The notes beneath the pieces are model-generated. The model was not told the DNA's origin. It saw only the letters and a program-made list of their open reading frames with translations, and ran no database searches. Below, piece after piece: positions 11,470-21,734 of a DNA stretch of 22,019 bases (the first letter of the stretch is position 1; every line of letters starts with the position of its first letter). The position numbers and the translations under genes are program-made. The stretch comes from Octopus sinensis (Eukaryota). The DNA is taken from assembly GCF_006345805.1 (NCBI RefSeq), contig NW_021823584.1, positions 1 to 22,019 on the forward strand, written 5' to 3'.

Positions 11470-12376
11470 TTTAGGGTTAGCCTACACTGTAAACAATATC
11501 CGTAGAGTTATACCGGAGAAGTAAAGATACAGGCCGCAAAACGACGCTGGAGCTGTGCGAGACATTGGCCTTACTCTACGGGTGTGAAAACTGGAAAGTG
11601 AAAGAAAAAAAGGGAAAGAAAGACAATGGACAGATTCCAGAAGTGGCTGCAAAATGTTCGAAATGACACAATTTAGACAATGATGGGTTGTGACGAAATG
11701 TGGAGGCGCAATGGCCCAGTGGTTAGGGCAGCGGACTCGCGGTCATAGGATCGCGGTTTCGATTCCCAGACTGGGCGTTGAGAGTGTTTATTGAGCGAAA
11801 ACACCTAAAGCTCCACGAGGCTCCGGCAGGGGATGGTGGTGATCCCTGCTGTACTCTTTCACCACAACTTTCTCTCACTCTTACTTCCTGTTTCTGTTGT
11901 ACCTGTATTTCAAAGGGCCGGTCTTGTCACTCTCTGTGTCACGCTGAATATCTCCGAGAACTATGTTAAGGGTACACGTGTCTGTGGAGTGCTCAGCCAC
12001 TTACGCGTTAATTTCACGAGCAGGCTGTTCCGTTGATTCGGATCAACCGGAACCCTCATCGTCGTAACCGACGGAGTGCTTCCTACTCCTACTGTGACGA
12101 AATAAGGATCAGTGACGAAATAGGATGCAGATGTTGGAACTGGGTCGGAAGCGTCGTCAGGAAAGACCGAAAAAGCGGTTGTATGGTGGCACTAAGATGG
12201 TAGCTTGAGGGGAAAAGAACAGCAGGGCAGCCTAAAACCACATGCCAAAGGACCGTTGATAAGGAAAGGAAAAGGGGTAGAGGAGGTGGGATTAGACCAG
12301 AACAGTAGCAGAAAACAGAGCTGGTTGGAGAGATTGTGATGCGGCCTTATCTGCCCCATGGTTCGGAGGGAACTTA
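11470..12376 (+). mobile_element. RTE-clade LINE 3' fragment (dead), interrupted by SINE-B
   Basis: LLYGCENWKV at 11571-11600. After the SINE: ISDEIGCRCWNWVGSVVRK...VALRW*LEGKRTAGQPKTT. Matches RTE C-terminal motifs LLYG.E.W, RRW.W.GHV.R and W.P.GKR..GRP..TW. The left boundary is approximate. Confidence 0.75.
11700..12092 (+). mobile_element. Full-length SINE-B with 11-bp TSD
   Basis: A-box-like TGGCCCAGTGG and B-box-like GGTTTCGATTCCC. Tail ...CTTCCTACTCCTAC. TSD TGTGACGAAAT at 11689-11699 and 12093-12103. Confidence 0.92.
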
Positions 12377-12660
12377 TTGACCGAGGTTACCGTGGTCTTT
12401 TCCGTAGGCTTTTCTTTCCACGGATAAACCCTATCTGCTTCCCCCTTTACACTTTACACCATGACATTTCAAATTGATAATTTTTTTCTTTTTCTTTTTC
12501 TTTCCCTTTTACGATCCCTTTTGATCGAAAACCTACCCTACATTTTCGTTTTCTTTTCTCCCCATAAAGAAAAGCTCTACTTTGTAATCTGTCTCGTCTG
12601 TGTGCAGCTCTGTGTGGCTAATAAAGAAACATATCTATCTTTCTATCTATCTATCTATCT
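12376..12660 (+). mobile_element. Tx1-like 3'UTR-only copy with AATAAA and (TATC)n tail
   Basis: First ~90 bp match the reverse complement of 6350-6439. The remainder matches the reverse complement of 6460-6625. AATAAA at 12620-12625, TATC repeats from 12632. Confidence 0.8.
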
Positions 12661-12914
12661 TCTTTATGTTGCATGTCTCGTTTCTCTGTTGTTGTTTTTA
12701 TGTTGTTCGAAAAAAATTTCGTTTTCCATGTTTTTGTTTTTATGTTTTCGTTTCTCATTGTGTTCAACGTTTTTTTAACGTCCTGTACCCATATATGCAT
12801 GTATATATACATATCTATGTAGGTACGTACATATATGTATGTATACATGCATATATTTATATATTATTTATATTGTTATATGATCGAACACCACGCATCC
12901 TTATCCAAGTAGTT

Positions 12915-15672: not shown

Positions 15673-18320
15673 TTCATGTACACACAACAGATTAAACTGA
15701 CATCTGGCTACAGGTAACCTTAGATGCCAAGAACCCTCCTCAGTATCCTAGCTGTCCCTAATAACACTGTTTTCTGGAGCTGTACTAAACTGGGTTTTAT
15801 GCCTATTTCCTATATCCATCCGTTCACATCTTTAGGGATAGTTCCCAATGCACCTATAACTACTGGGATACACTTTACCCCCATTTTCCATAGTCCCTGT
15901 AATTCAATGGTTAGGTTCTGGTACTTTGCTATTTTTTCTATACCTCTCATATTAATTTTTCATCATTCGGGATTATAAAGTCAATTACCTGGTACTTTCT
16001 ATTCTTTTCGTTTGCTACTACTAAATCAGGCCTTCTCGCTTCTATTACTCTGTATGTCTGAATGTTAATTTAGCTTTGATTTCATTAACTTCCTTACCCT
16101 TCTAATGTACTCGTCAATTTTCGTTTTCATTTCTGTAGTTAGTACTCTGACAGATTCTAATACTCCTAGATACTTATAACTTTCTCCTTTTCTTAATGAT
16201 TTTAATGATTGGCCATCTGGTAATTGGATGCCTTCGCTGTTGACTACCTGTCTCCTTTACAGGCCTAATATTGCACACTTATCTATGCCAAATTCCATGT
16301 CTATATCTTTGCAGGAGAGTCTTACAGTCTGTGTTAAGGAATCTCCTTTTTCACTAAAAAGCTTCAGATCATCCATGTAGAGCAAATGGTTAATTTTTCT
16401 CCTACTATTTCTGAACTGTTACCCTGCTTTTTCCTTCCTTAATACTAAACTGAGGGGGATGAAGCATAAGGTAAATATTAATGGGGACAACGAGTCTCCC
16501 TGGAAAATTCCTTTTTTGATATTAACTTTCTCTAAGAGTGTGTCACCTGAGTAGAGATCTACTTTCCATTTCTTCATGCTAAAGCAGGTTTTATGTTGTC
16601 TGCTATACTGAATATACTCAAACATTCACTTATCCATGAGTGTGGGATCATGCCATAGGCTTTCATGTCATAATCTATCCATACTCTTGTTGGATTTCCC
16701 TTTCTAGCTTTTACTTAATTTAAAACTGTTTTATCTATGTATAATAGATCATGCGTTCCTCTAGCCTTCTTCTTGCATCCTTTTTGTTCTTCTGGCAGTA
16801 AATTCTGGTTGTCAAGGTGCTCGTAAATGCTTTCCTGTTAACAGCTTCCACACTAATGGGAAGCAAGTGATTGGTCTATAGTTGCTAGCTGTATTACCCT
16901 TGCTCTTATCTTTCATAATGAGTATTGTCCTCCCTCTAGTCATCCAATTTGGTATTATTCCTCCATTAATGCAATCCTGAAGTTGTTCCCTCAGCCTCCA
17001 ATGTAAACTACTAAATTTCTCTAGCTATTACCCTTGAAATAAATCTGGTCCTCAGCTCTTCTAATTGGGCATTTTTTCCTAATACTTTATCCATAAATGT
17101 ACTAGTTAATCTTAGATCTGGCTGCTTCTCACTCATTATTTCTTCCCTCACTTTCTTTAACCATACTGCATCTCCATTATGATTGACTGGCTTATCCCAA
17201 ATATTACTCCAGAACTTTCTAGATTCTTCTGCATTAGTTTTCTCATCTTCAAGACTTCGTTCTCCACTATCTATTTGGTTATAAAATCTCCTCTGATCTG
17301 TCTCAAATAATCTATTCTATAGATACTGATCTATTCTTTTCTGATATCTGGAGATCTTGCCTGCTACTGCTGTGATACGCTCTTATCCTTTCTCTTTGAC
17401 TAAATATCTTTTCTCAAGGGAAGATTTGCATCTTGTGTTTCCTAACTTGTTTTGTTTTCTAGGCTTCTGTTCTGCTCAGATCTTGTCTTAAAGTCTTCAT
17501 TTTATTTTGCAGTCTCCTTTTTCACATTTGCTCTTTTTTAATCTTTCTCTGTGAGATATCTAATCTTCTAGTGACTACTGCCCCTCCTGCATAGATCAAT
17601 AAGATAGTGTCTCCTATATTTTTAGTATCTATCCTCCTGATAACAGAATCTACTTTCCTGGTCATTTCTAGCAGCTTCCTTCTGTTGGTGCCTTTTAATG
17701 CTGGCAATTTTTTCCTTACTTCTTTACTCATTACTTCCTGCAACCCATCTAAAATCTTCTAACTTTCCTCACTTAAATCCCTTAAGTCGCTGGTGCCAGT
17801 TGTCCATTCCTTATTGGTAACGCTATCATTTTTTTCCTTTAGGTTCTTCTTTGGTTTGAGCAGTATCCCTTATGTTGTTTTTTTCTTTCCTACTGTCTGG
17901 CTTTTCTTTTCCAGTTCCTTTGTGGTCTTTTCTACTCCCAATTCTATCATCCTTCTTCTCTTAATAGGATTAGGTTGATCTACTAATCTCTGCGCAGTCA
18001 CTTTAAACATACCCTTCTCTACCCAAAGTGTTAACATCCGTTTTCTATAACCCCTTCTTTTAGGTTCAATTTCTAAGTAGCACTGCATCACAATCCTGAT
18101 TTGTTCGCTGGTCCACTTCCTCCTCCCTACTCCATTATCTGCTGATGTTGTATTAGGATAACAACTGCGATCAGTCTGCATCTATACTGAACCACTGCCG
18201 AACGAGAGGCCTTCCCTTTAAGGCCCAGCTTCATTTTCGATGTTACAACCAGAGTGTCTTCGGAAACTCCTGTCTCTCATAAACTGAGGTAAGGCAACGT
18301 TCATCACCAACGTCATCACC
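15673..18320 (-). mobile_element. R4/Dong-clade non-LTR retrotransposon (RT + RLE endonuclease), inactivated, internally deleted
   Basis: N-terminal RRKWT...GYRKRM..LW segment, FWSNIWD, NYRPITC (~16864-16883), QGDSLSP (~16482-16502), YMDD (16368-16379). RLE motifs RPDLVV..VIDF..EKIAKY..IPVVIGALG..LLGTARILRRVL* with the stop at 15720-15722. Many stops and frameshifts. The 5' boundary is inferred from a TAA remnant at 18323-18331. Confidence 0.9.
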
Positions 18321-19090: not shown

Positions 19091-19175
19091 ATGTATGTAT
19101 GTATGTATGTATGTGTATGTATGTATGTATGTATGTATGTATGTATGTATGTATGTATGAATGTATGTATGTATA
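19075..19175. repeat. (TA)/(TATG)n microsatellite
   Basis: Direct reading. Confidence 0.95.
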
Positions 19176-19459
19176 AGCATGTATGAGTGCGGTGCACTGG
19201 TCTGTTATTGGTTGGATCAGCAAAAAGGAAGTATTCCAAGCAGTAGGAGTTGAATATCATTTAATACACTTGGAAGTAATTTAATGTAAATTCGAACTAC
19301 TATAAGTTTCATGCCTCTGATAATACAATGGTCGGATGAGCTTGTATAGCATGTCCTGTGTTACCAGGCAGTCATGTAGGCTCACGCCTGAAATCGTGCA
19401 TTCCTCTGTATATTAATGCACACGTATGTATGTATTCATGAATGTGAATAGATATAGAT

Positions 19460-19820: not shown

Positions 19821-20059
19821 AGTGTATCTCAAGCATGACATCATTATTTAGTGAGATATAAATTTCGCGCTAGTTGCGAGGTTTTTGACATTTGCATAAT
19901 TCCTACGAGCATCTCGCTTCAAACATTTTGTCTTCGTTCATTTGTTCCGTCTCTGCTTTCCGGCAATTGTTTTCTTCCTACTCAAAATACATTCACATTT
20001 AGTTTTACACCGTGCGTGCGTGTGTGTGTGTGTGGTGTGTGTGTGTGTGTTTGTGCTTT

Positions 20060-20263
20060 AATATCGATTTCAAATTTTGGAACAAAGCCAGCAATTTCGG
20101 GGGTGGGATAAAGTCGATTACATCGGCTCCAGTATTCAGCTGGTGCTTAATTTATCGACCCCGAAAGGATGAAATATAAAGTCGACTTCGGCAGCATTCG
20201 AACTCCGAACGTAAAGACAGACGAAATGCCGTGAGCATTTATGTCCGGCGCGCTAACGATTCT
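20060..20263 (-). mobile_element. SINE-C copy with tail 1, head slightly truncated
   Basis: Reverse complement AGAATCGTTAGCGCGCCGG...AAATTGCTGGCTTTGTTCCAAAATTTGAAATC matches 1540-1720 and 5110-5280. Confidence 0.87.
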
Positions 20264-21021
20264 TATTTCTTTATTGCCCACAAGGGGCTACACACAGAGG
20301 GGACAAACAAGGACAGACAAACGGATTAAGTCGATTATATCGACTCCAGTGCATAACTGGTACTTATTTAATCGATTTAATCGACCCTGAAAGGATGAAA
20401 GGCAAAGTCGACCTCGGCGGAATTTGTACTCAGAACGTAACGGCAGACGAAATACCTATTTCTATACTATCCACAAGGGGCTAAACACAGAGAGGACAAA
20501 CAAGGACAAACAAACGGATTATGTCGATTATATCGATCCCAGTGCGTAACTGGTACTTAATTTATCAACCCCGAAAGGATGAAAGGCAAAGTCGACCTCG
20601 GCGGAATTTGAAATCAGAAGGTAAGGACAGACAAAATACCTATTTCTTTACTACCCACAAGGGTCTACACACAGAGGGGACAAACAAGGATAGACAAACG
20701 GATTAAGTCGATTACGTCGACCCCAGTGCGTAACTGGTACTTAATTTATCGACCCTGAAAGGATAAAAGGCAAAGTCGACATCGGCGGAATTTGAACTCA
20801 GAACGTATCGGCAAACGAAATACCTATTTCGTTACTGCCCACAGAGGGGACAAACAAGGACAGACAAACGGATTAAGTCGATTATATCGACCTCAGAGCG
20901 TAACTGGTATTTATTTAATCGACCCCGAAAGAATGAAAGGCAAAGTCGGCCTCGGCGGAATTTGAACTCAGAACGTAACGGCAGACGAAATACCGCTACG
21001 CATTTCGCCCGGCGTGCTAAC
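20264..21021 (-). repeat. Tandem array of 4 SINE-C body + tail-2 units (193, 184, 184, 170 bp) behind one partial head
   Basis: Unit starts on the plus strand at 20264, 20457, 20641 and 20825. Head remnant at 20995-21021. Confidence 0.93.
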
Positions 21022-21734
21022 ATCCCTGTCTGCACACTGCCTTTCGTTGCGTACTCTAATATTAATCGTTGTTGACTTGTAGTCTTGTCCCGTTTTGTTA
21101 TACATTTTTTAAAATTTTGTAATTGTTGATTTATCAACGAAAGAAAAGAAACGAGCAAGAAAAAAAAAACCATATAACCTGTGCCAACGTCAGAAACGAA
21201 CATAAATCCGAAAATAATAGACTACAAAAGAAAAAAAAAAACTAATAAAAGACAACGGTGACGAGAGTTTTCAGATGGATAATCTTTCCGGGTTATTCAT
21301 TTCGTCTTTCATGTATGTAGTTTTAATAGCACTACATTTCTTTTGGTGATGGCCTTCCCTCGTATCATCATCATCAGGCGTATTGGTGTATTATTACTGA
21401 TCATGTACATAGAAACATAGTACAACATTTTCATCTAATGAGGTTAGTGAGTCCGTAAAATTTTCGTACGACGAATATCAATGGCGCTTCACTGAGCGTT
21501 TGAAACTTTATCAACGCGAACTTTTATTACAAAATTAATGGTTTCCGATGTACGCACAAGGACAGCAATTTAAAGAAAGCAGGGCAGCAGGGCAGCCACC
21601 TTGAACTTGTCTTAGCTGTCATTGCTATTCCTGTGTCTCTTGTGGCTTTCTTTAACTGTTTGGGTTCCAAGCCAATCTTCTGCGAGAAATAGCGCAGTGA
21701 TCTGTTCTGTTGTTTCATGGCTGTGTAATTAAAA

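What the first reader, a model, noticed from the sequence alone, without database searches (positions are those of the whole stretch)
20267..20312. A SINE whose 3' tail is shared with a Tx1/L1-clade LINE in the same window
Seen: SINE-C tail 2 (TTCTTTATTGCCCACAAGGGGCTACACACAGAGGGGACAA---ACAAGG) aligns with the extreme 3' end of the Tx1-like LINE at 6462-6510 (TTCTTTATTGGCCACACAGGGCTGCACACTGATTGGACAAGTTACAAGG). The match is 39 of 46 aligned bases plus one 3-nt gap, and includes AATAAA. The LINE end recurs at 12590-12630. Established: a shared 3' end is the hallmark of a SINE mobilised by a stringent-type LINE (CR1, L2, RTE), whereas L1-clade partners usually need only poly(A). Inference: this is a SINE-Tx1 partnership made by tail capture. 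I cannot check whether it has been described.
Basis: partly seen in the sequence, partly recalled or inferred. Interest (0 to 1): 0.75.

Follow-up and report, generated by a model that had tools for sequence, protein, structure and literature searches.

The report
Octopus SINE sharing a LINE tail
A short non-coding mobile element in this octopus-like genome ends in the same ~45-base sequence as an L1/Tx1-type LINE in the same window, the usual sign that the LINE's enzyme copies the short element; the match is real and recurs in two other octopod genomes, but it is a new example of a known kind of partnership.

Summary
SINE "tail 2" (20264-20312, sense on the minus strand) aligns 39/46 plus one 3-nt gap with the extreme 3' end of a LINE at 6462-6510. 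It also aligns with a second LINE end at 12580-12629. These are the two best matches in the window (scores 27.5 and 23.0; shuffles 13.4 ± 1.3, maximum 18.5).

The same box, ...GTCCCCTCTRTGT..GCCCTTGTGGCYAATAAAGAA, ends about ten further LINE copies in Octopus bimaculoides, Argonauta hians and a metagenome contig. Most of them are contiguous with ORF2 and its 3'UTR. It also ends stand-alone SINEs there. In Argonauta several SINE families carry it, and six copies show 13-17 bp target-site duplications.

Full-length relatives of the LINE have the layout APE + RT + zf-RVT. Their best solved relative is human L1 ORF2p. I did not resolve Tx1 versus L1 myself; published trees place Octopus L1-superfamily LINEs in Tx1.

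Caveats: the window's own tail-2 copies sit in a 184-bp tandem array fused to a tail-1 SINE and have no visible duplications. Tail 2 is the minority tail in Octopus. Mobilisation by the LINE is inferred, not shown.

SINEs with L1-clade tails and a Tx1-SINE partnership are already published, so this is a new member of a known kind.

The parts
20264..20312 (-). LINE-derived 3' box ('tail 2') of SINE unit u4; this is the finding itself
   Evidence: 39/46 identities plus a 3-nt gap to 6462-6510. It is the best hit in the masked window.
20264..20456 (-). SINE-C unit u4: 5'-truncated, starts at GGTATTTCG, complete tail 2
20457..20640 (-). SINE-C unit u3: same 5' truncation, tail 2
20641..20824 (-). 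SINE-C unit u2: same 5' truncation, tail 2
20825..21041 (-). SINE-C unit u1: full-length head with a B-box-like GAGTTCAAATTCC; tail 2 has an internal ~14-nt deletion
20056..20263 (-). SINE-C copy u5 with the alternative tail 1 followed by (AC)n. It is joined directly to the end of u4 and starts at internal position ~14 (AGAATCGTTAGCG)
   Evidence: The same junction occurs in O. bimaculoides L007 at 29951.
6462..6510 (-). 3'-terminal box of LINE copy 1
6462..6892 (-). 3'UTR of LINE copy 1, contiguous from the ORF2 stop codon to the box
6893..7247 (-). C-terminal 118 codons of LINE ORF2 plus the stop (5'-truncated copy)
   Evidence: 70% identical to residues 994-1103 of the 1111-aa ORF2 protein P0157. 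A 73%-identical relative has zf-RVT immediately upstream of this stretch.
6439..6460 (-). (TATC)n repeat directly after the LINE end
7248..7339 (-). (TATC)23 directly upstream of the truncated LINE, so the same repeat lies on both sides
12375..12629 (+). LINE copy 2: 3'UTR only, ending in the box (12580-12629)
12632..12665 (+). (TATC)n-like repeat after LINE copy 2
6268..6438 (-). A second copy of the proximal LINE 3'UTR block, continuing into a different ~75-nt end followed by (TAAC)n(TATC)n. This is a LINE relative with another terminus.
5113..5288 (+). SINE-C copy with the start of a tail-1-type tail, cut short
1335..1726 (+). Two adjacent SINE-C copies with tail 1 (1335-1501 and 1541-1726)

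Best explanation
SINE-C is a CORE-like SINE with pol III A- and B-box-like motifs in its head, found in an octopus-type genome. It exists with two alternative 3' modules. Tail 2 is a copy of the last ~40-45 nt of the 3'UTR of an octopod LINE lineage. That lineage has an ORF1 with a CCHC knuckle and an ORF2 of 1111-1160 aa with the layout APE endonuclease, reverse transcriptase, then a C-terminal zf-RVT CCHC motif. It belongs to the L1 superfamily and is very probably Tx1.

The most likely mechanism is stringent-type trans-mobilisation. The LINE's ORF2 protein recognises this terminal box on its own RNA to start target-primed reverse transcription. A pol III SINE transcript that carries the same box is taken as a template instead and is inserted with ~15-bp target-site duplications. 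The box has been joined to several unrelated SINE bodies, which is tail exchange or 'mosaic' SINE evolution.

Shown here: the homology, its position at the termini of both elements, its link to ORF2, its conservation across octopods, the duplications, and the LINE's domain layout.

Inferred: that the box is the recognition signal and that this LINE is the enzyme source.

The particular tail-2 copies in the window are probably not four clean insertions. They are three equal 5'-truncated units behind one full unit. The junction lies in a GAAATA microhomology between the tail end and the head. The array is fused to a tail-1 SINE.
For: - Chance is excluded in the window and in Argonauta (score 23 against shuffles 12.7 ± 1.2, maximum 17).
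- The homology is limited to the termini.
- The box ends about twelve LINE copies: two in the window; three in O. bimaculoides L007; one in the JGI contig L005 after an intact 1111-aa ORF2; four in Argonauta L006, including an intact 1160-aa ORF2; and two in Argonauta L027.
- SINEs ending in the box: window u1-u4; a stand-alone copy on L004; O. bimaculoides 29720-29950; four copies in Argonauta L006; and ten or more copies of several different SINE bodies in L027.
- Six Argonauta copies show 13-17 bp duplications, among them a perfect 15-bp ATTTATCGACTCAAA and a 17-bp example.
- LINE class: RVT_1 + Exo_endo_phos + zf-RVT. Best PDB match is human L1 ORF2p at 175 bits over residues 38-829; R2 gives 81 bits over the RT only.
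- Martelossi et al. 2023 supplementary data class Octopus L1-superfamily LINEs as Tx1, next to Tx1_XT and Koshi.
Against: - There is no functional test.
- In Octopus, tail 2 is a minority: 1 of ~14 SINE-C copies in 58 kb of O. bimaculoides. In the window it occurs only in an array.
- I found no clear target-site duplication for any Octopus tail-2 copy.
- In both the window and L007, tail 2 is followed by a SINE that starts at the same internal point. There tail 2 may be an internal linker of a dimer rather than an active terminus.
- The SINE copies lack the long (TATC)n or (ATT)n repeat that follows the LINE copies.
- A small GCCC/GGGC hairpin upstream of AATAAA is not supported beyond shuffles, and folding energies are unremarkable.
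- My own comparison does not separate Tx1 from L1: 205 bits to a labelled bivalve L1-Tx1 against 175 bits to human L1.
Confidence: 0.82

Rival explanations
1. The window's tail-2 segments are a local structural product. One SINE insertion was followed by tandem duplication of a 184-bp segment between two GAAATA motifs and by fusion to a neighbouring tail-1 SINE. Alternatively it is a dimeric SINE whose real terminus is tail 1. On this view tail 2 is not an active 3' end in this genome, even though it descends from a LINE end.
For: - Units u2-u4 share exactly the same 5' break, and the period is 184 bp.
- The junction from tail 2 to AGAATCGTTAGCG recurs in O. bimaculoides.
- No duplications are visible around the array.
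- Tail 1 predominates in Octopus.
Against: - A stand-alone full-length tail-2 copy with unrelated flanks exists on L004.
- Homologous SINEs in Argonauta end exactly at the box and have duplications.
- The array units are only 85-92% alike over the last 40 nt. That is no closer than to copies in other genomes, so the array is old or built from separate insertions.
- This rival concerns the local copies only. It does not explain away the homology.
Confidence: 0.12
2. The direction of transfer is reversed, or a third party is involved. Either the LINE copies picked up a SINE tail (or a SINE inserted at their 3' ends), or both took the box from another element. In that case the box would not be the LINE's own recognition signal.
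For: Sequence alone does not give direction. A SINE fragment lies directly upstream of one LINE 3' fragment in L027, near 4700-4830.
Against: - The box ends LINE subfamilies whose ORF2 C-termini are only ~50-70% identical and whose 3'UTRs otherwise do not align. These are the window copies, the three O. bimaculoides copies, L005 and the Argonauta copies. This points to an old LINE feature.
- No SINE body sequence lies upstream of the box in any LINE copy.
- The box is attached to several unrelated SINE bodies.
Confidence: 0.04
3. The similarity arises by chance or from low complexity: a TG-rich stretch plus an AATAAA signal.
For: The region is TG-rich and the window is full of microsatellites.
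Against: - Shuffle tests in two genomes reject chance.
- Both in-window hits are in the same register and at the same terminal position.
- The same box recurs at element termini in three further sequence sources.
Confidence: 0.01

Closest known systems
UnaL2 / UnaSINE1 of the eel and other stringent-type SINE/LINE pairs (Kajikawa & Okada 2002; cited in PMC3472496 and PMC4494074)
   Same: The SINE and LINE share only the last tens of nucleotides. The LINE box lies at the very end of the 3'UTR. The implied mechanism is recognition of the 3' end by the LINE's RT.
   Different: The partner there belongs to the L2 clade, and the partnership was proven by retrotransposition assay. The terminal repeat is shared by SINE and LINE there. 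Here the SINE copies lack the long (TATC)n or (ATT)n repeat, and nothing has been tested functionally.
L1-clade LINEs with SINEs sharing their tails: LINE1-1_ZM with ZmSINE2/ZmSINE3, and L1-1_CR with SINEX-3_CR (Ohshima 2012, PMC3472496)
   Same: An L1-superfamily LINE whose 3' end (~45-80 nt) is shared with SINEs, implying stringent recognition in a clade usually regarded as poly(A)-dependent.
   Different: Those cases are in plants and a green alga. [quoted passage not shown] Here the host is an animal (octopods), the elements end in microsatellite repeats, and no supported structure was found. [quoted passage not shown]
Tx1-Mar LINEs and SINEU in crocodilians (Kojima 2015, PMC4494074)
   Same: A Tx1-clade LINE proposed as the mobiliser of SINE families. 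Tx1 relatives there are also associated with microsatellites.
   Different: That partnership was inferred from shared target preference and shared snRNA-derived 5' heads, not from a shared 3' tail. The SINE heads there are U1/U2, whereas here they are tRNA-like.
Mosaic HCD-SINEs of bivalves with several LINE partners (Martelossi et al. 2024, PMC11481361)
   Same: One SINE body carries alternative LINE-derived tails, and the same tail appears on different SINE bodies. SINE-LINE homology spans 35-61 bp in molluscs.
   Different: Four partner clades are reported there, and the term Tx1 does not occur in that paper. Cephalopods were not its subject.
Octopus CORE-SINE OR2 (Ohshima & Okada 1994; mentioned in PMC4758252)
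   Same: A tRNA-derived octopus SINE with a CORE-type central domain. The body of SINE-C (TTTCATCCTTTCGGGGTCGATAAATTAAGTACC) resembles the MIR/CORE segment as I recall it.
   Different: I could not obtain the OR2 consensus, so identity with SINE-C and the nature of OR2's tail are untested.

Membership tests
SINE (pol III-transcribed, LINE-dependent retroposon) | Internal pol III promoter (A and B boxes) in a small-RNA-derived head | tested here: inconclusive
   B-box-like GAGTTCAAATTCC and A-box-like TTAGCACGCCGGG can be read in the head. Argonauta SINE-D has AGCTCAATTGGTAGAGCG and GGTTCAATCCC. ARAGORN and Rfam call no tRNA in any copy.
SINE (pol III-transcribed, LINE-dependent retroposon) | Dispersed copies flanked by target-site duplications | tested here: met
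   Met for the box-bearing SINEs of Argonauta: 13-17 bp duplications at six copies. Not seen for the window's array or for the O. bimaculoides copy.
Stringent-type SINE/LINE pair (shared 3' tail) | Homology restricted to the 3' termini of both elements, within the same genome | tested here: met
Stringent-type SINE/LINE pair (shared 3' tail) | The shared segment is the LINE's own 3'UTR end and is linked to ORF2 in most copies | tested here: met
   Contiguous ORF2, 3'UTR and box in the window copy 1, L005, L006 (several copies), L007 (two copies) and L027.
Stringent-type SINE/LINE pair (shared 3' tail) | Conserved stem-loop in the shared tail | tested here: inconclusive
   A 4-bp GCCC/GGGC helix is 84.6% paired, but 84 of 500 shuffles do as well. 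Folding z-scores range from -1.3 to +0.6.
Stringent-type SINE/LINE pair (shared 3' tail) | Shared terminal repeat | tested here: not met
   LINE copies end in (TATC)n or (ATT)n. SINE copies end at GAAATA or GAAATCTATT with at most one repeat unit.
Stringent-type SINE/LINE pair (shared 3' tail) | LINE-dependent mobilisation that requires the tail | not testable with these tools
   This needs a retrotransposition assay.
L1 superfamily LINE | ORF2 with N-terminal APE endonuclease, RT and a C-terminal CCHC (zf-RVT) motif, closest to L1 ORF2p | tested here: met
   Pfam results. PDB search: L1 ORF2p at E = 1e-50 over endonuclease and RT, R2 much weaker. The window itself retains only the last 118 codons.
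Tx1 clade | RT phylogeny groups the element with Tx1, Keno, Koshi and relatives | not tested
   No reference RT set could be loaded. As a proxy, P0157 scores 205 bits to a labelled bivalve L1-Tx1 ORF2 and 175 bits to human L1, while that bivalve element scores 330 bits to human L1, so the proxy is uninformative. The published RTclass1 result and tree place Octopus L1-superfamily LINEs in Tx1, but I did not show that this family is among them.
Tx1 clade | Sequence-specific insertion (microsatellites, multicopy genes, transposons) | tested here: inconclusive
   Window copy 1 has (TATC)n on both sides. LINEs in Argonauta L006, SINE-D in L027 and SINE-C in the window form head-to-tail arrays. Against this, Argonauta SINE copies sit in unrelated AT-rich sites with ordinary duplications.
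CORE-SINE superfamily | Central CORE domain | not tested
   The resemblance to the MIR/CORE segment comes from memory only. Published annotations call most octopus SINEs tRNA-Core or tRNA-Deu.

The most novel reading that the evidence does not exclude
An animal Tx1-clade LINE lineage, conserved across Octopoda, uses stringent recognition of a ~45-nt terminal box. It thereby drives many unrelated SINE families, dominantly in Argonauta and as a minority subfamily in Octopus. Its integration favours the tails of earlier copies, which produces head-to-tail arrays of LINEs and SINEs. This would be the first tail-defined SINE partnership for Tx1 and would identify one engine of the octopod SINE expansion.
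Probability: 0.4. Interest if true: 0.55.

Novelty: new member of a known kind. Interest (0 to 1): 0.42.

Why it matters
SINEs make up roughly a tenth of Octopus genomes, and in the latest O. vulgaris annotation nearly all recently active SINE families are 'unclassified' (PMC13282606). Naming a LINE partner for at least one tail class gives a handle on how these elements spread. It also adds an animal case to the few L1-superfamily LINEs that appear to need a specific 3' sequence rather than only a terminal repeat. That bears on whether stringent recognition is ancestral in the L1/Tx1 group (Ohshima 2012). An intact Argonauta copy (ORF1 plus a 1160-aa ORF2, L006 13670-19667) would make the idea testable in a retrotransposition assay.

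Tried and rejected
- I scanned JGI metagenome contigs for a degenerate tail-2 pattern and got 0 hits. A scan for a SINE-body pattern gave 18 hits, none related to the SINE.
- A protein-database search with an antisense translation of the SINE gave a single hit, L004. The collection holds little octopus DNA.
- The contigs L001, L002, L003 and L026 end before the LINE tail and were of no use for 3' ends.
- Exact SINE and tail strings are not found in the paper library.
- Supplements of the Kojima 2015 and SINEBase papers are not held, and the Albertin 2015 paper is not held.
- Rfam hits in the window are all sub-threshold miRNA models lying on microsatellites, so they are artefacts.
- ARAGORN finds no tRNA in any SINE head.
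- A conserved hairpin in the box is not supported.
- I tried to label the LINE as Tx1 by similarity to a published bivalve 'L1-Tx1' consensus. That element is closer to human L1 than to the octopod LINE, so the test was uninformative.
- Cluster look-ups gave no clade names.

Full report
**What is at the coordinates**

The window is extremely rich in microsatellites and SINEs. The finding lies in a block on the minus strand, 21041-20056, made of five head-to-tail copies of one SINE.
- Unit u1 (21041-20825) has a full head. It carries an A-box-like TTAGCACGCCGGG and a B-box-like GAGTTCAAATTCC.
- Units u2-u4 (20824-20264) all begin at the same internal point, GGTATTTCG, immediately after the preceding unit's end ...AAAGAAATA. 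This produces the 184-bp tandem repeat that TRF reports.
- All four units end in 'tail 2': ...CCGTTTGTCTGTCCTTGTTTGTCCCCTCTGTGTGTAGCCCCTTGTGGGCAATAAAGAAATA. In u1 the tail has an internal deletion.
- The fifth copy (20263-20056) and three other copies in the window (1335-1501, 1541-1726, 5113-5288) share the head and body. After ...GTAATCGACTT they switch to a different 'tail 1'...CCCCGAAATTGCTGGCTTTGTTCCAAAATTTGAAATCGATATTAAAG.

In this window, however, tail 2 is seen only inside the array.

**The LINE in the window**

On the minus strand, a (TATC)23 repeat (7339-7248) is followed by the last 118 codons of an ORF (7247-6893). A 431-nt 3'UTR follows and ends in ...CCTTGTAACTTGTCCAATCAGTGTGCAGCCCTGTGTGGCCAATAAAGAA at 6462. 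Then comes (TATC)5. A second, ORF-less copy of the 3'UTR lies on the plus strand at 12375-12629. It has the same end and is followed by a (TATC)n-like repeat. The tail is therefore physically continuous with the ORF2 C-terminus in copy 1.

**Is the match more than chance?**

The alignment is 39/46 plus a 3-nt gap, as stated. I masked all SINE-C copies and searched tail 2 against the window. The two best local alignments are exactly the two LINE ends (27.5 and 23.0), and the next best scores 15.5. Three hundred dinucleotide shuffles gave 13.4 ± 1.3 with a maximum of 18.5. Both hits are in the same register and end at AATAAAGAA.

**What the LINE is**

- The 118-residue fragment has few relatives in the word-indexed protein search. 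One of them (P0002, 73% identical) carries Pfam zf-RVT directly upstream of the part retained in the window.
- An exhaustive search with P0002 found 524 relatives. The long ones have the layout Exo_endo_phos + RVT_1 + zf-RVT in 1100-1150 aa.
- Cluster look-up led to P0157 (1111 aa, JGI metagenome contig) and P0161 (Argonauta hians). The window fragment is 70% identical to P0157 residues 994-1103.
- The best solved relative of P0157 is human L1 ORF2p: 175 bits, aligned over residues 38-829, which covers endonuclease and RT. R2 proteins match only the RT, at 81 bits or less.
- The Argonauta element is intact. It has an ORF1 with a CCHC knuckle and a 1160-aa ORF2.

This establishes an L1-superfamily LINE. 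I could not separate Tx1 from L1 myself. A bivalve consensus labelled L1-Tx1 (PMC10294476 Data S4) scores 205 bits to P0157 but 330 bits to human L1. The published RTclass1 calls and ML tree of that paper place all Octopus L1-superfamily LINE clusters in Tx1, sister to Tx1_XT and Koshi. O. vulgaris annotations list L1-Tx1 as the only L1-type class. Tx1 is therefore likely but rests on inference.

**Evidence from elsewhere: LINE ends**

DNA could be fetched around several relatives. The same terminal box ends the following copies, most of them contiguous with ORF2 and 3'UTR:
- The metagenome LINE L005...GTCCTAGGCCCTAGTGGCCAATAAATGAAATC(ATT)n, 315 nt after an intact ORF2.
- Four LINE ends in Argonauta L006 and two in L027...CGTCCCCTCTATGTTTTGCCCTTGTGGCTAATAAAAGAATTA(ATT)n.
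- Three O. bimaculoides copies in L007. One has (TATC)n, one has (ATT)n, and one is decayed.

These LINEs are only ~50-70% identical in the ORF2 C-terminus, and their 3'UTRs otherwise do not align. The box is nevertheless always at the extreme end. It is therefore an old property of the LINE lineage, not a SINE fragment inserted into some copies.

**Evidence from elsewhere: SINEs**

- A stand-alone full-length tail-2 SINE with unrelated flanks sits on an ENA metagenome contig, L004.
- In 58 kb of O. bimaculoides, one of ~14 SINE-C copies has tail 2 and the rest have tail 1.
- In Argonauta the homologous SINE ends in ...TGTCCTTCTATGTTCGGCCCTTGTGGCTAATAGAGAAATCT.
- In Argonauta the box is also carried by several other SINE bodies, including a ~150-nt tRNA-like SINE. 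There are four copies in L006 and ten or more in the 20.8 kb of L027.
- Six of these copies show 13-17 bp target-site duplications. Examples are TATAACTTATAATA, A(T/A)TTTTAGTGATATTT, a perfect ATTTATCGACTCAAA and a 17-bp TTATTTGCTAGCTGG.CC.
- A shuffle test in Argonauta again singles out the LINE end: score 23 against 12.7 ± 1.2, maximum 17.
- Over the last 40 nt, SINE-LINE identity is 55-78%, similar to LINE-LINE identity between subfamilies (52-80%). Just upstream, SINE-LINE identity is 16-46%.
- The Octopus SINE tail aligns best with the Argonauta (ATT)n LINE end (26.5-30.5). That is at least as good as its match to the (TATC)n LINE in the window. The exact partner subfamily in Octopus is therefore open.

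**Mechanism**

The anatomy matches a stringent-type SINE/LINE pair. The LINE RT would recognise the terminal box on its own RNA, and a SINE RNA carrying the box would be used in trans. The ~15-bp duplications in AT-rich sites fit an APE-type nick followed by target-primed reverse transcription. Several Argonauta duplications begin with ATT or AAT, directly after ...GAAATCT. This would fit priming by microhomology with an (AUU)n-type RNA end; that step is inference.

The same body with two tails (Octopus), and the same tail on several bodies (Argonauta), indicate tail exchange. The direction of exchange for SINE-C is unknown. I found only the LINE-type tail on its Argonauta homologue.

I looked for a conserved structure. 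A 4-bp helix (GCCC...GGGC) before AATAAA is possible, with C-G in Octopus SINEs and G-C in Argonauta elements. It does not beat shuffles, and predicted energies are ordinary.

**Local complications**

- The junction between array units lies in a GAAATA microhomology. The tail ends ...AAGAAATA, and the head has GAAAT(G/A) 7-12 nt before GGTATTTCG. Tandem duplication of one truncated insertion is as likely as repeated insertion.
- The unit tails are 85-92% alike over the last 40 nt, no closer than to copies in other genomes.
- In both the window and O. bimaculoides, tail 2 is followed at once by a SINE that starts at the same internal position, (A/G)AGAATCGTTAGCG. This suggests either a dimeric family or site-specific insertion into SINE heads.
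- Head-to-tail arrays also occur for the LINE in Argonauta: a 6.0-kb period, 99% identity, units separated only by (ATT)n. They also occur for SINE-D in L027.
- Together with (TATC)n on both sides of window LINE copy 1, this hints at a preference for the elements' own tails or for microsatellites, as is known for Tx1 relatives. However, the ordinary duplications of the Argonauta SINEs show that insertion is not strictly site-specific.

**Comparison with what is known**

- Shared 3' ends define some 58 SINE/LINE pairs. [quoted passage not shown]
- A Tx1-SINE partnership (SINEU with Tx1-Mar) was proposed from shared targets, not shared tails.
- Mosaic tails are well documented in bivalve SINEs, with 35-61-bp homologies. 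Tx1 is not named there as a partner.
- I found no description of this octopod pair. I had no access to Repbase, Dfam or SINEBase.

**Verdict**

The finding is a new member of a known kind and is of moderate interest.

Noticed in passing
window 20264-20994 (minus strand): The SINE units form a 184-bp tandem array. The unit boundary lies in a GAAATA microhomology between the tail end and the SINE head. Units u2-u4 share one truncation point.
   Followed up: partly
window 20263; L007 29951: Tail 2 is followed directly by a SINE-C copy starting at the same internal point, (A/G)AGAATCGTTAGCG(C/T)GC(C/T)GGAC. This occurs at two unrelated loci. It may be a dimeric SINE family or site-specific insertion into SINE heads.
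   Followed up: partly
L006 1649-19667 (Argonauta hians): At least three full-length LINEs and one 3' fragment lie head to tail with a ~6.0-kb period. They are 99% identical and are separated only by (ATT)n. The first copy has a divergent 5' third (73% identity).
   Followed up: partly
L027 ~5000-5350 (Argonauta hians): Three full-length copies of a ~150-nt tRNA-like SINE lie in direct head-to-tail tandem. Each ends in the LINE box. In all, twelve or more box-bearing elements of several families lie in 20.8 kb.
   Followed up: partly
window 5695-5769 and 6268-6342: A 75-nt inverted repeat (88% complementary) flanks 498 nt of compound microsatellite. The right arm continues from a second copy of the LINE's proximal 3'UTR block (6438-6343). 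It looks like two tail-to-tail 3' ends of a LINE relative with a different terminus.
   Followed up: partly
window 11700-12090 and 71-227: A different SINE family with a clear tRNA-like head (GGCGCAATGGCCCAGTGGTTAGGGC...GGTTTCGATTCCC) and a long conserved body. Two copies are 86% alike. It lies directly upstream of LINE copy 2.
   Followed up: no
window 16356-16967 (minus strand): Weak RT-like similarity (39-43% over ~44 aa) to the LINE ORF2 queries. This is probably a decayed fragment of another LINE family.
   Followed up: no
window 17870-18181 (minus strand): A 103-aa basic ORF (MQTDRSCYPNTT...RRKWTSEQIRIVMQCY...) with no Pfam family. It may be a fragment of a transposon protein.
   Followed up: no
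L002, L003, L004, L005 (ENA and JGI 'metagenome' contigs): Octopod LINE and SINE sequences occur in assemblies deposited as metagenomes. These are presumably host or prey DNA in those samples.
   Followed up: no
PMC10294476 Data S4, LINE_T.granosa_5_cons: A bivalve consensus labelled L1-Tx1 is closer to human L1 ORF2p (330 bits) than to the octopod LINE (205 bits). The 'L1-Tx1' label therefore covers very divergent lineages. The stored file captioned 'SINE library' begins with LINE entries.
   Followed up: partly
window 12791-12856, 8912-9011, 19125-19196 and others: Sub-threshold Rfam miRNA hits (mir-297, mir-3149, mir-1277) all lie on TA/TG microsatellites and are artefacts.
   Followed up: yes
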